Shown here: piece after piece, positions 45,639 through 46,554 of the stretch
Position numbering within the stretch: position 1 is the first letter of the stretch
How the letters are laid out: the number at the start of each line of letters is the position of its first letter
Virus record (IMG/VR): IMGVR_UViG_3300037882_001770
Coordinates: 186,001 to 250,000 of that record
Strand: one strand, 5' to 3'
Length of the DNA stretch: 64,000 bases
Translations under genes and position numbers: made by a program
Notes under the pieces: model-generated
Databases searched by the model: none
What the model was told of the DNA's origin: nothing
Seen by the model: the letters and a program-made list of their open reading frames with translations, nothing else

Positions 45639-45775
45639 GGCATTTTGGATAACCAAAGATACACATTATGGTTGACAACAAATACTCAATCAGCTATAAT
45701 ATGTATATGCTAAGAAATTGGCATAGTAGTTCAGTAGTTTAAATCAACTTAATAGGCAACTTAGAAAGGCAACAC

Positions 45776-46105
45776 ATGTCACAAGAAAAATTATTTACAG
45801 TAGCAGGTACAGCAACTAATCCTAACGGCACAGTGAAAGCTCGTTTCGCTAACGATTTGGTAGCTCGTATCAAGATTTTAAACAAAGCAGGTTGCACTGC
45901 AATCAATTTAATTGAGCTCCCAAGCCCAATGACCAAATTGCAAGCTCTCCAGCATTTGCAGAGCGTTGGTATCACTGAAGGTGATGCTGGTTACGCAGTA
46001 GCAAACAAGTTGGCAGAAAAGACCAAGCTCGCCAAGAAAGGCGAAGTAAAGGTCAAGGCAACCGCAGTTAAGGCACCTGCTAAGGCAGAGAAAGTAACAG
46101 CCTAA
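45776..46105 (+). CDS. hypothetical protein with Lys/Ala-rich tail
   Basis: VAG.....G..K.RFAND..RIK.L.K.G...I.L.ELP.PMTK; promoter 45672/45695. Confidence 0.8.
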   Translation: MSQEKLFTVAGTATNPNGTVKARFANDLVARIKILNKAGCTAINLIELPSPMTKLQALQHLQSVGITEGDAGYAVANKLAEKTKLAKKGEVKVKATAVKAPAKAEKVTA

Positions 46106-46137
46106 TCTTCAGGGGCCAGGCAACTGTAAGTCCCCTG

Positions 46138-46260
46138 ATATTAGTTTTGTTGTTTGTAAGCTCAGAAGCACGATCAAGCCTTATGTAACCAAAACAATAA
46201 ACAGTAAACTCGAGTAAAGCTGTTGAGTTAGGCATATAGTGCAAACAACAAAACTAATAT
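46138..46260. repeat. perfect 19-bp inverted repeat enclosing 85 nt
   Basis: ATATTAGTTTTGTTGTTTG 46138-46156 / CAAACAACAAAACTAATAT 46242-46260. Confidence 0.9.
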
Positions 46261-46264
46261 TACG

Positions 46265-46287
46265 AGCTCACTTCGGTGAGCTTTTTT
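46265..46287 (+). terminator. intrinsic terminator with UUCG loop
   Basis: AGCTCAC-TTCG-GTGAGCT-TTTTT. Confidence 0.9.
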
Positions 46288-46317
46288 ACGGCCAACATTT
46301 CTATGCTAAGTATCTTT

Positions 46318-46554
46318 ATGCTGGACGATATCAAACTCGAAGAAAGTATTCGCTTAACTATCCTTAATCTTATGGTGGTGTTGCATGATTGCGGAATTAA
46401 AGAAATACACCTAGGCGGGCTCATGCGAATACTTGGAATTGCCAATGACAAAGCAAGTATGCATGACAATGAGCTGGTTCAAATAGATGATAATTTTGTT
46501 AAATATGTAGAGGAAATAAATGCTCCAAGACCCGCAAATCAATCTTTACATTAA
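46318..46554 (+). CDS. hypothetical protein
   Basis: TAAGTA late-type promoter just upstream; VL...GI..IH.G.LMR.LG. Confidence 0.7.
   Translation: MLDDIKLEESIRLTILNLMVVLHDCGIKEIHLGGLMRILGIANDKASMHDNELVQIDDNFVKYVEEINAPRPANQSLH

What the first reader, a model, noticed from the sequence alone, without database searches (positions are those of the whole stretch)
46106..46290. 3' region with a 19-bp perfect stem enclosing a structured insert
Seen: after the stop at 46105 come a hairpin TCAGGGG-c-CAG(GCAA)CTG-taagt-CCCCTGA, a perfect 19-bp inverted repeat (extendable by a G-U and an A-U pair) around a segment with AGCTCA/TGAGTT, GCCT/AGGC and AACAG/CTGTT pairings that could cross, then a UUCG terminator. 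Inference: a processed ncRNA (RNase III-type substrate, ribozyme-like or decoy RNA) or a miniature inverted-repeat element.
Basis: partly seen in the sequence, partly recalled or inferred. Interest (0 to 1): 0.6.

Follow-up and report, generated by a model that had tools for sequence, protein, structure and literature searches.

The report
Self-pairing phage RNA beside tRNA islands
The 19-bp stem closes one copy of an uncatalogued, about 127-nt phage RNA whose two hairpin loops always carry self-complementary sequences, so it probably pairs with copies of itself, as the giant phage RNAs GOLLD and ROOL do.

Summary
Window 46136-46262 (+) folds into a 23-bp outer stem (P1) around a three-helix core.

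It is not a lone oddity or a MITE. A covariance model finds 97 copies (96 distinct sequences) in uncultured, apparently freshwater phage contigs, one per contig. None matches any Rfam 15 family.

Covariation supports all helices: 95.5% of cells pair, against 76% shuffled and 34-45% slid, and 32 of 36 pairs show double changes. U·G wobbles fix the strand as +.

Both hairpin loops are palindromic in 96 of 96 sequences. P4 carries eight different 6-nt palindromes (CUCGAG in the window). P2 carries GAUC, GCGC, GUAC, GGCC and others. This palindrome-to-palindrome switching is the published signature of symmetric intermolecular kissing loops in OLE and GOLLD.

Outside the window's clade, all 81 copies lie in phage tRNA arrays on the tRNA strand, and 48 abut the CCA end of the upstream tRNA. 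At least ten lie 408-433 nt upstream of a GOLLD 3' domain.

In the window the RNA sits in a short transcription unit: perfect sigma-70 promoter, conserved 109-aa gene, hairpin H1, motif, terminator.

Best reading: a processed, trans-acting RNA that homo-oligomerises. Its function is unknown.

The parts
45672..45700 (+). Promoter-like site TTGACA-17-TATAAT, 12 of 12 matches to the sigma-70 consensus, upstream of the 109-aa gene
   Evidence: This is a consensus match only; activity was not tested.
45776..46105 (+). 109-aa ORF with a Lys/Ala-rich tail. It is highly conserved (71-94% identity in the 80 viral loci kept, of 89 found) and has no Pfam, PHROG or PDB match. The RNA lies in its 3' untranslated region.
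46109..46138 (+). Hairpin H1: stem UCAGGGG/CCCCUGA, apical CAG-GCAA-CUG, 3' bulge UAAGU. Its last 3 nt are shared with P1. It stands where a tRNA acceptor end stands in the tRNA-array copies.
   Evidence: The GGGGC...RUAAGUCCCC form occurs in 16 of 80 relatives, single copy in the genome. It precedes the motif in every copy that has no tRNA nearby.
46136..46158 (+). P1, 5' arm of the outer stem (23 nt)
   Evidence: 21 of 22 P1 pairs show changes on both sides.
46165..46182 (+). P2 hairpin (46165-46169 / 46178-46182). Its 8-nt loop is 46170-46177 (ACGAUCAA), with the palindrome GAUC at 46172-46175.
   Evidence: All 4 pairs covary, and the loop is palindromic in 96 of 96 sequences.
46189..46195 (+). 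P3, 5' strand (CCAAAAC); pairs with 46227-46232
   Evidence: 82.6% paired against 66% shuffled, 5 of 6 pairs with double changes.
46201..46223 (+). P4 hairpin (46201-46205 / 46219-46223). Its 13-nt loop is 46206-46218 (AA-ACUCGAGU-AAA), with the palindrome at 46208-46215.
   Evidence: A palindrome of 6 nt or more is present in 96 of 96 sequences, in eight different hexamer kinds.
46227..46232 (+). P3, 3' strand (GUUAGG)
46240..46262 (+). P1, 3' arm of the outer stem
46264..46287 (+). Intrinsic terminator: GAGCUCAC-UUCG-GUGAGC followed by U6. The same terminator is kept in relative L018, which lacks H1 and the motif, and in L266, which has both.
   Evidence: The simple scan did not list it, apparently because the stem can extend into the T run (my reading).
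46318..46554 (+). Next gene (starts MLDDIKLEE...), after the terminator; it is not part of the RNA.

Best explanation
Window 46136-46262 (+) encodes one copy of a new family of small structured phage RNAs, about 107-135 nt long.

Shown:
- The RNA has a long outer helix P1 whose sequence is free but whose pairing is kept.
- P1 encloses a highly conserved core with hairpin P2 and the stacked helices P3 and P4.
- The apical loops of P2 and P4 always carry self-complementary words, and these change from one palindrome to another between phages.

Inferred:
- Each loop forms a symmetric loop-loop (kissing) duplex with the same loop of a second molecule, so the RNA acts as a homodimer or a larger homo-oligomer.
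- It is made as part of a longer transcript. In the window that is a short unit running from a consensus sigma-70 promoter through a 109-aa gene to an intrinsic terminator. In most other phages it is a tRNA-array precursor.
- Its ends are set by the flanking structures. In arrays these would be RNase P cleavage at the 5' end of the next tRNA and 3' processing of the preceding tRNA. RNase III cleavage within the 19-26 bp P1 is possible, and hairpin H1 takes the tRNA's place in the window.
- It acts in trans. Its position has moved between related jumbo phages (tRNA island or 3' UTR) while the core stayed nearly identical.

Its cellular role is unknown. My best guess is a self-assembling RNA particle that belongs to the same phage tRNA-island toolkit as GOLLD, which it often directly precedes.
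For: Structure:
- 97 copies were aligned to the model. 95.5% of cells pair, against 75.6% shuffled and 34-45% slid. 32 of 36 pairs have double changes (the 47-sequence set agrees).

Strand:
- U·G or G·U is the commonest pair at three positions.
- The one reverse-strand match listed scores 28 bits, against 146 bits for the forward strand.
- In all array loci together, only one tRNA lies on the opposite strand to the motif.

Palindromic loops:
- The P4 loop holds CUCGAG, CAAUUG, CACGUG, CGAUCG, CUGCAG, CGGCCG, UUGCAA or UCGCGA at a fixed place before UAAA, in 96 of 96 distinct sequences.
- The P2 loop holds GAUC/UGAUCA, GCGC, GUAC/UGUACA, UGCA, ACGU, GGCC or CUAG, in 96 of 96.
- The scan patterns left the P4 hexamer unspecified, and that also left out the P2 loop.
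- Six adjacent nucleotides cannot pair with each other within one loop. The same argument was used, and confirmed by cryo-EM, for OLE L9.3 and GOLLD L21a (PMC12286853, read).
- Self-duplexes of the hexamers are stable, at -3 to -10.7 kcal/mol.

Context:
- 81 of 97 copies lie in tRNA arrays and 48 abut the upstream tRNA at -6 to +3 nt.
- In L321, three tRNAs separate the motif from GOLLD, so the motif is a separate unit.
- A GOLLD 3' domain lies 408-433 nt downstream in at least ten loci.
- Some array-bearing contigs (L156, L164, L286) share proteins with the window's genome at up to about 80% identity.
- The window's transcription unit is shown.
- An empty site exists in L018.
Against: - There is no expression or end-mapping data.
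- Dimerisation is inferred from sequence alone. No RNA 3D or complex prediction was available.
- In the window and 18 other sequences the P2 palindrome is only 4 nt (GAUC, -1.8 kcal/mol as a bare duplex).
- Two metagenome sequences seen only in the pattern scan, and not among the 97 aligned copies (L278, L284), appear to replace the P2 loop with a GCAA tetraloop. The P2 contact may therefore be dispensable or different in nature.
- The many invariant unpaired nucleotides could equally serve catalysis or protein binding.
- All copies come from metagenomes, and no host is known.
Confidence: 0.6

Rival explanations
1. The palindromic loops are contact points for something other than a second copy. 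They could bind a dimeric RNA-binding protein. They could also pair with the palindromic loops of GOLLD, so that the small RNA is an accessory or cap of a GOLLD assembly rather than a particle of its own.
For: The motif lies directly upstream of GOLLD in at least ten loci. GOLLD loop L21a itself switches between GGCC, GAUC and AGCU, and GGCC and GAUC are also among the P2 loop words.
Against: The window's genome has no GOLLD, and neither do 12 tRNA-flanked loci within the DNA fetched. A protein would be expected to hold the loop sequence constant, not only its symmetry. Any palindrome pairs with itself at least as well as with another RNA.
Confidence: 0.15
2. It is only a cis-acting processing or stability element. 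On this view the long stem is an RNase III site that separates or protects neighbouring RNAs (tRNAs, or the mRNA 3' end), and the core has no function of its own.
For: P1 is 19-26 bp in most copies, long enough for RNase III. The element sits between tRNAs, or between an ORF and a terminator.
Against: Forty-six columns are invariant in the first 25 sequences, most of them outside the helices. Palindromes are maintained in both loops. The core differs at only a handful of about 83 positions between the window and L127, which have different contexts. None of this is needed for a cleavage site. tRNA arrays are processed without such spacers elsewhere.
Confidence: 0.1
3. It is a new class of self-cleaving or otherwise catalytic RNA.
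For: It has a compact multi-helix junction with many invariant unpaired nucleotides. Small ribozymes are common in phage and metagenome DNA.
Against: No Rfam ribozyme family matches, even at E up to 10. Catalysis does not explain the palindromic loops. tRNA-flanked copies need no self-cleavage to be released.
Confidence: 0.07
4. It is a DNA-level element: a miniature inverted-repeat transposable element, a cruciform, or a set of protein-binding or restriction-like palindromic sites.
For: It has a perfect 19-bp inverted repeat. The loop palindromes coincide with common restriction sites (my knowledge). Presence and absence are patchy among relatives.
Against: There is a single copy per genome. 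The stem sequence is not conserved between copies. No target-site duplication was noticed. Frequent U·G pairs would be A·C mismatches on the other strand. The one reverse-strand match listed scored 28 bits against 146.
Confidence: 0.02

Closest known systems
GOLLD (Rfam RF02032) and ROOL RNAs
   Same: They are phage-encoded, located in or next to tRNA islands, and of unknown function. They are held together as homo-oligomers partly by symmetric kissing loops whose palindromes covary (PMC12286853). GOLLD lies directly downstream of this motif in several loci.
   Different: This motif is 5 to 8 times smaller (about 125 nt against 600 to more than 800). It shares no sequence or secondary structure with them, and there is no Rfam match. 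It is closed by its own long stem. It occurs without GOLLD, and tRNAs separate it from GOLLD in L321.
OLE RNA dimer
   Same: Several symmetric contacts lie on one two-fold axis, including a kissing loop that switches between palindromes.
   Different: OLE is a roughly 600-nt bacterial RNA with protein partners, found in extremophilic Firmicutes. It is not a phage RNA and is not linked to tRNA arrays (my knowledge).
phi29 prohead RNA (pRNA)
   Same: It is a roughly 120-nt phage RNA. A long helix formed by its 5' and 3' ends projects from a junction whose two loops make intermolecular base pairs, giving an oligomer (my knowledge; it is cited in PMC12990946).
   Different: The two pRNA loops are complementary to each other, which gives a head-to-tail ring. 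Here each loop is complementary to itself. pRNA is restricted to phi29-like phages, is not in tRNA arrays, and its Rfam family does not match.
T4 species 1 and species 2 RNAs (rnaC, rnaD)
   Same: They are small stable RNAs of still unknown function, co-transcribed within a phage tRNA cluster and released by tRNA processing. Species 1 is a known RNase III substrate in vitro (my knowledge).
   Different: There is no similarity: the model scored against the T4 cluster with filters off gives no match overlapping rnaC or rnaD up to E = 10. T4 rnaC carries a tRNA-like T arm, which this motif lacks.
HIV-1 dimerisation initiation site (DIS) hairpin
   Same: It is a hairpin loop with a 6-nt palindrome flanked by unpaired purines that forms a symmetric kissing dimer. 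Different strains use different palindromes (my knowledge).
   Different: It is a single hairpin in a viral genomic RNA. The resemblance is to one interaction, not to the family.

Membership tests
GOLLD RNA (RF02032) | Match to the Rfam covariance model at 150 bits or more | tested here: not met
   There is no hit in the window, none in the whole 317-kb genome up to E = 10, and none at the motif itself. In loci that do hold GOLLD, the model match starts 408-433 nt downstream of the motif.
Any Rfam 15 family (ROOL, OLE, pRNA, ribozymes, Y RNA, 6S and others) | Match at the family's gathering score | tested here: not met
   0 matches at gathering score in the window and in 8 related loci. At E up to 10 the only hits are far below threshold, mostly microRNA precursor models matching the long hairpin.
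Miniature inverted-repeat transposable element (MITE) | Many copies per genome, with conserved terminal inverted repeats and target-site duplications | tested here: not met
   There is one copy in the genome and one per related contig. The stem arms differ between copies while the interior is conserved.
RNAs with symmetric (homotypic) kissing loops | A hairpin loop carrying a palindrome that changes to other palindromes across homologues | tested here: met
   P4 has eight hexamer palindromes and P2 has at least seven tetramer or hexamer palindromes. Both are palindromic in 96 of 96 distinct sequences.
RNAs with symmetric (homotypic) kissing loops | Physical dimer or oligomer formation | not testable with these tools
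   This needs native gels, SEC-MALS or mass photometry, or cryo-EM.
RNase III substrate | About two turns (about 20 bp or more) of near-perfect double-stranded RNA | tested here: met
   P1 is 23 bp in the window. It is 19-28 bp in most copies and 13 bp in a short-stem subgroup.
RNase III substrate | Actual cleavage by RNase III | not testable with these tools
T4 species 1 / species 2 RNA | Sequence and structure similarity to rnaC or rnaD | tested here: not met
   The model scored against T4 69000-74000 with filters off gives no hit overlapping rnaC or rnaD.
Intrinsic terminator (the UUCG hairpin at 46264-46287) | G+C-rich hairpin followed by a U tract | tested here: met
   The sequence is clear. 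The hairpin is conserved in L018 and L266. The simple scan missed it.

The most novel reading that the evidence does not exclude
This may be the smallest natural building block of an RNA-only assembly. On this reading, a roughly 125-nt phage RNA uses two different self-complementary kissing loops, and so two two-fold axes, to build closed multimers or lattices rather than simple dimers. These could form on their own or together with the GOLLD nanocage encoded next to it. That would give a tractable handle on the unsolved function of the RNAs of phage tRNA islands.
Probability: 0.25. Interest if true: 0.85.

Novelty: new variant of a known kind. Interest (0 to 1): 0.75.

Why it matters
Natural RNA-only quaternary structures were recognised only recently (OLE, ROOL, GOLLD). 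They are few, large and of unknown function.

This candidate offers several advantages for study:
- It is about 125 nt long and abundant in lake phage metagenomes.
- Its two interfaces are defined by covariation.
- It neighbours GOLLD in several genomes.
- It is small enough for mutational, biophysical and structural work.

It could therefore show what tRNA-island RNAs do for phages. It also adds a well-supported family that is missing from Rfam. Finally, it shows that related jumbo phages can carry the same RNA either as a tRNA-flanked gene or in an mRNA 3' UTR.

Tried and rejected
- Rfam at gathering score and at E up to 10 gave nothing relevant.
- Megablast and blastn against 50,697 cultured phage records gave no match.
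- An exact search for the window's stem arm in viral contigs gave one unrelated chance hit, L086.
- A pattern scan of 185,579 prokaryote species genomes gave 7 hits, none confirmed by the model. No prophage or host was found, although only one pattern was scanned.
- The T4 rnaC/rnaD comparison was negative.
- For the 109-aa protein, Pfam, PHROGs, PDB sequences and the Atlas gave no function. The large protein searches were not spent on it.
- The supplement of the IMG/VR structured-RNA catalogue (PMC10690425) is not held. I could not check whether this motif is among its 10,006 unnamed candidates.
- I looked by eye for J1/2 mimicking the P4 5' strand, as a possible conformational switch. I found no consistent covariation and dropped the idea.

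Full report
**Setting**

The window is bases 186001-250000 of a 317-kb IMG/VR virus record, a jumbo phage estimated 89% complete. Genes around the finding are phage-like: a glycosyltransferase, a metallophosphoesterase and a cell-wall hydrolase/endolysin. The genome has no tRNA genes and no GOLLD RNA.

**The observation**

After the stop codon of a 109-aa ORF (45776-46105) come three structures:
- Hairpin H1 at 46109-46138.
- A perfect 19-bp inverted repeat at 46138-46156 / 46242-46260, which extends to 23 bp with two wobble pairs.
- A UUCG-loop hairpin followed by a U run at 46264-46287.

The region folds far better than shuffled sequence (z = -5.5). A 12-of-12 sigma-70 consensus promoter lies at 45672-45700. 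The whole is therefore a compact unit: promoter, ORF, H1, long-stem element, terminator.

**It is a family, not a singleton**

- The upstream protein has 89 relatives in viral contigs, of which 80 were kept. In most of these the ORF is followed by a simple hairpin, a terminator, or another gene.
- L006/L007, L022, L025 and L026 carry a homologous long-stem element. Their stems have changed by compensatory substitutions, and their interior words are conserved.
- L018 has the same terminator and next gene but lacks both H1 and the element, so it is an empty site.
- Four collection scans were run: a 14-nt interior word, a 5'-half pattern, and a pattern that leaves out the P2 loop and leaves the P4 hexamer free, run on genomes and on metagenomes.
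- Together with covariance model R1, built from 25 sequences, these gave 97 copies (96 distinct sequences), each scoring 64-146 bits.
- There is one copy per contig.
- Nothing in Rfam 15 matches.
- There is no match in 50,697 cultured phage records.
- There is no confirmed match in one genome for each of 185,579 prokaryote species.

**Architecture**

- P1 is the outer stem. It is 13-28 bp long, 19 or more in most copies, and 23 bp in the window.
- P2 is a short hairpin with an 8-9 nt loop.
- P3 is a 6-7 bp helix, interrupted by an internal loop in the window's subtype.
- P4 is a 5-bp hairpin with a 13-nt loop, enclosed by P3.
- The joining strands are almost invariant.

On the 97-sequence alignment, 95.5% of cells form standard pairs. 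This compares with 75.6% when partners are shuffled and 34-45% when they are slid. 32 of 36 pairs show changes on both sides. The extended P3 is separately supported.

The strand is fixed as + for three reasons:
- U·G or G·U is the commonest pair at three positions.
- The one reverse-strand match listed scored 28 bits, against 146 bits forward.
- Across all the array loci, only one tRNA lies on the opposite strand to the motif.

**The key feature: two palindromic loops**

In all 96 distinct sequences the P4 loop reads AA(N0-2)-hexamer-UAAA, apart from two divergent copies whose loops are longer (L189, L229). The hexamer is always a palindrome: CUCGAG (the window and most copies), CAAUUG, CACGUG, CGAUCG, CUGCAG, CGGCCG, UUGCAA or UCGCGA.

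The P2 loop always holds a 4-6 nt palindrome: GAUC/UGAUCA, GCGC, GUAC/UGUACA, UGCA, ACGU, GGCC or CUAG.

A random hexamer is a palindrome once in 64. Seven independent replacements that all keep the symmetry are therefore not chance. The scan patterns did not specify these bases.

Adjacent nucleotides of one loop cannot pair with each other, so the selected partner must be the same loop of another molecule. This is the argument that Kretsch et al. used for OLE L9.3 and GOLLD L21a, whose symmetric kissing loops were seen by cryo-EM (PMC12286853). The calculated self-duplexes are stable, for example -10.7 kcal/mol for ACUCGAGU.

**Context elsewhere**

- Of the 97 copies, 81 lie inside phage tRNA arrays of up to 41 tRNAs.
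- 48 of these start 2-6 nt inside, or within 3 nt of, the 3' end of the preceding tRNA, so P1 begins at its CCA. Many end at or just before the first base of the next tRNA. Ordinary tRNA processing would therefore release the RNA.
- The flanking tRNA identities vary.
- The 16 copies without tRNAs all belong to the window's clade and always follow H1 directly. H1 occupies the place of the upstream tRNA.
- Several array-bearing contigs (L156, L164, L286) share proteins with the window's genome at up to about 80% identity. Related jumbo phages therefore carry the same RNA in different settings, which argues for a trans-acting product.

**Link to GOLLD**

In at least ten loci the Rfam GOLLD model matches 408-433 nt downstream of the motif on the same strand. 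By my reading, that gap is about the size of the variable GOLLD 5' domain. In L321 three tRNAs lie between the motif and that domain, so the motif is a separate RNA rather than part of GOLLD. Twelve loci where the motif is flanked by tRNAs show no GOLLD in the DNA fetched. According to the literature, GOLLD and ROOL are phage RNAs of tRNA islands that form RNA-only cages.

**Interpretation**

I regard it as settled that this is a conserved, strand-specific structured RNA of a new family.

I regard it as likely, at about two in three, that it homo-oligomerises through its loops. If both contacts lie on one two-fold axis the result is a dimer, as in OLE. If they define two axes the result is a larger closed or open assembly.

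Processing by tRNA enzymes or RNase III, and any role with GOLLD, are inferences. No expression data could be obtained. The rivals, in descending order of likelihood, are:
- contacts with a protein or with GOLLD;
- a mere processing site;
- a new ribozyme;
- a DNA-level element.

**Comparison and novelty**

The closest analogues by mechanism are GOLLD, ROOL and OLE, phi29 pRNA (whose two loops pair with each other rather than with themselves), and the HIV-1 DIS hairpin. The closest by context are the T4 species 1 and 2 RNAs, which the model does not match.

I found no description of this motif in the papers searched. It may be among the unnamed candidates of PMC10690425, whose supplement I could not read.

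Noticed in passing
L110:1132-1594 (-), L111:6249-6711 (+), L114:407-872 (-), L128:1448-1910 (+), L159:8247-8702 (-), L321:864-1329 (+), L369:2592-3061 (-): There are full-length GOLLD (RF02032) matches of 191-223 bits in these freshwater phage tRNA arrays, each with a tRNA embedded near the 5' end of the match. The roughly 414 nt before each match is conserved and has no consistent open reading frame; I take it to be the GOLLD 5' domain.
   Followed up: partly
L019:3167-3345, L022:3465-3640, L025:3503-3680 (approximate): A further G+C-rich stretch of about 180 nt follows the motif position in three relatives. It looks structured, starting GUCAACCC and ending in the conserved CCAGCCCGGGGCC...GACAUAAGGUAGCCGGGCACUU. 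It has some compensatory changes and no Rfam match even at E 0.1. Its nature is unknown.
   Followed up: partly
L019:3103-3170 and L020:3353-3393: At the motif's position these relatives carry reduced versions. L019 has an 11-bp stem around a 41-nt interior that keeps a hairpin with a CGCG-containing loop and the word AUGUAAC. L020 has only a 13-bp hairpin. They look like decayed or minimal forms of the element.
   Followed up: no
L285, L290, L294, L330, L333, L352, L364 (just after the motif): In window-clade relatives where a lipoprotein gene follows, its reading frame appears to start at the GUG inside the motif's conserved AUAGUGCAG and to run through the 3' arm of P1. If so, the start codon would be buried in the stem. 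I have not verified this.
   Followed up: no
L278 and L284 (metagenome): In this variant the P2 kissing loop seems to be replaced by a C-GCAA-G GNRA tetraloop, and P1 is short. The P4 palindrome is CGAUCG.
   Followed up: no
L265, L268, L272, L280, L291, L353: This subgroup has a short P1 of 13 bp, lying 2-3 nt after one tRNA. In four of the six loci the next tRNA follows after 7-8 nt; in L268 and L280 it follows after about 275 nt. The long stem is therefore not obligatory.
   Followed up: no
L093:1680-1743 (+) and L105:10653-10691 (-): Hairpins with the same UAAACUCGAGUAAA loop as P4 occur outside a full motif. L093 is also a tRNA-array contig. They may be a free-standing kissing-loop module or a diverged relative.
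   Followed up: no
window 46109-46138 and 16 related loci: Hairpin H1 has a conserved 3' bulge (A/G)UAAGU and a variable apex that ranges from a plain loop to an inserted 20-nt hairpin. It occurs directly after the stop codon of the 109-aa gene even where the motif is absent. It may be a protein-binding or processing site.
   Followed up: partly
G000:C1:314202-314640 (outside the window): ARAGORN calls a permuted tmRNA-like gene with an unusually long tag in a genome that has no tRNA genes. It may be spurious.
   Followed up: no
L164:11639-12008 (-) and L091:2777-3297 (-): These phage contigs with the motif also encode tmRNAs. L164 has a betaproteobacterial type at 152 bits, a possible hint to the host group, and L091 has a permuted type.
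   Followed up: no
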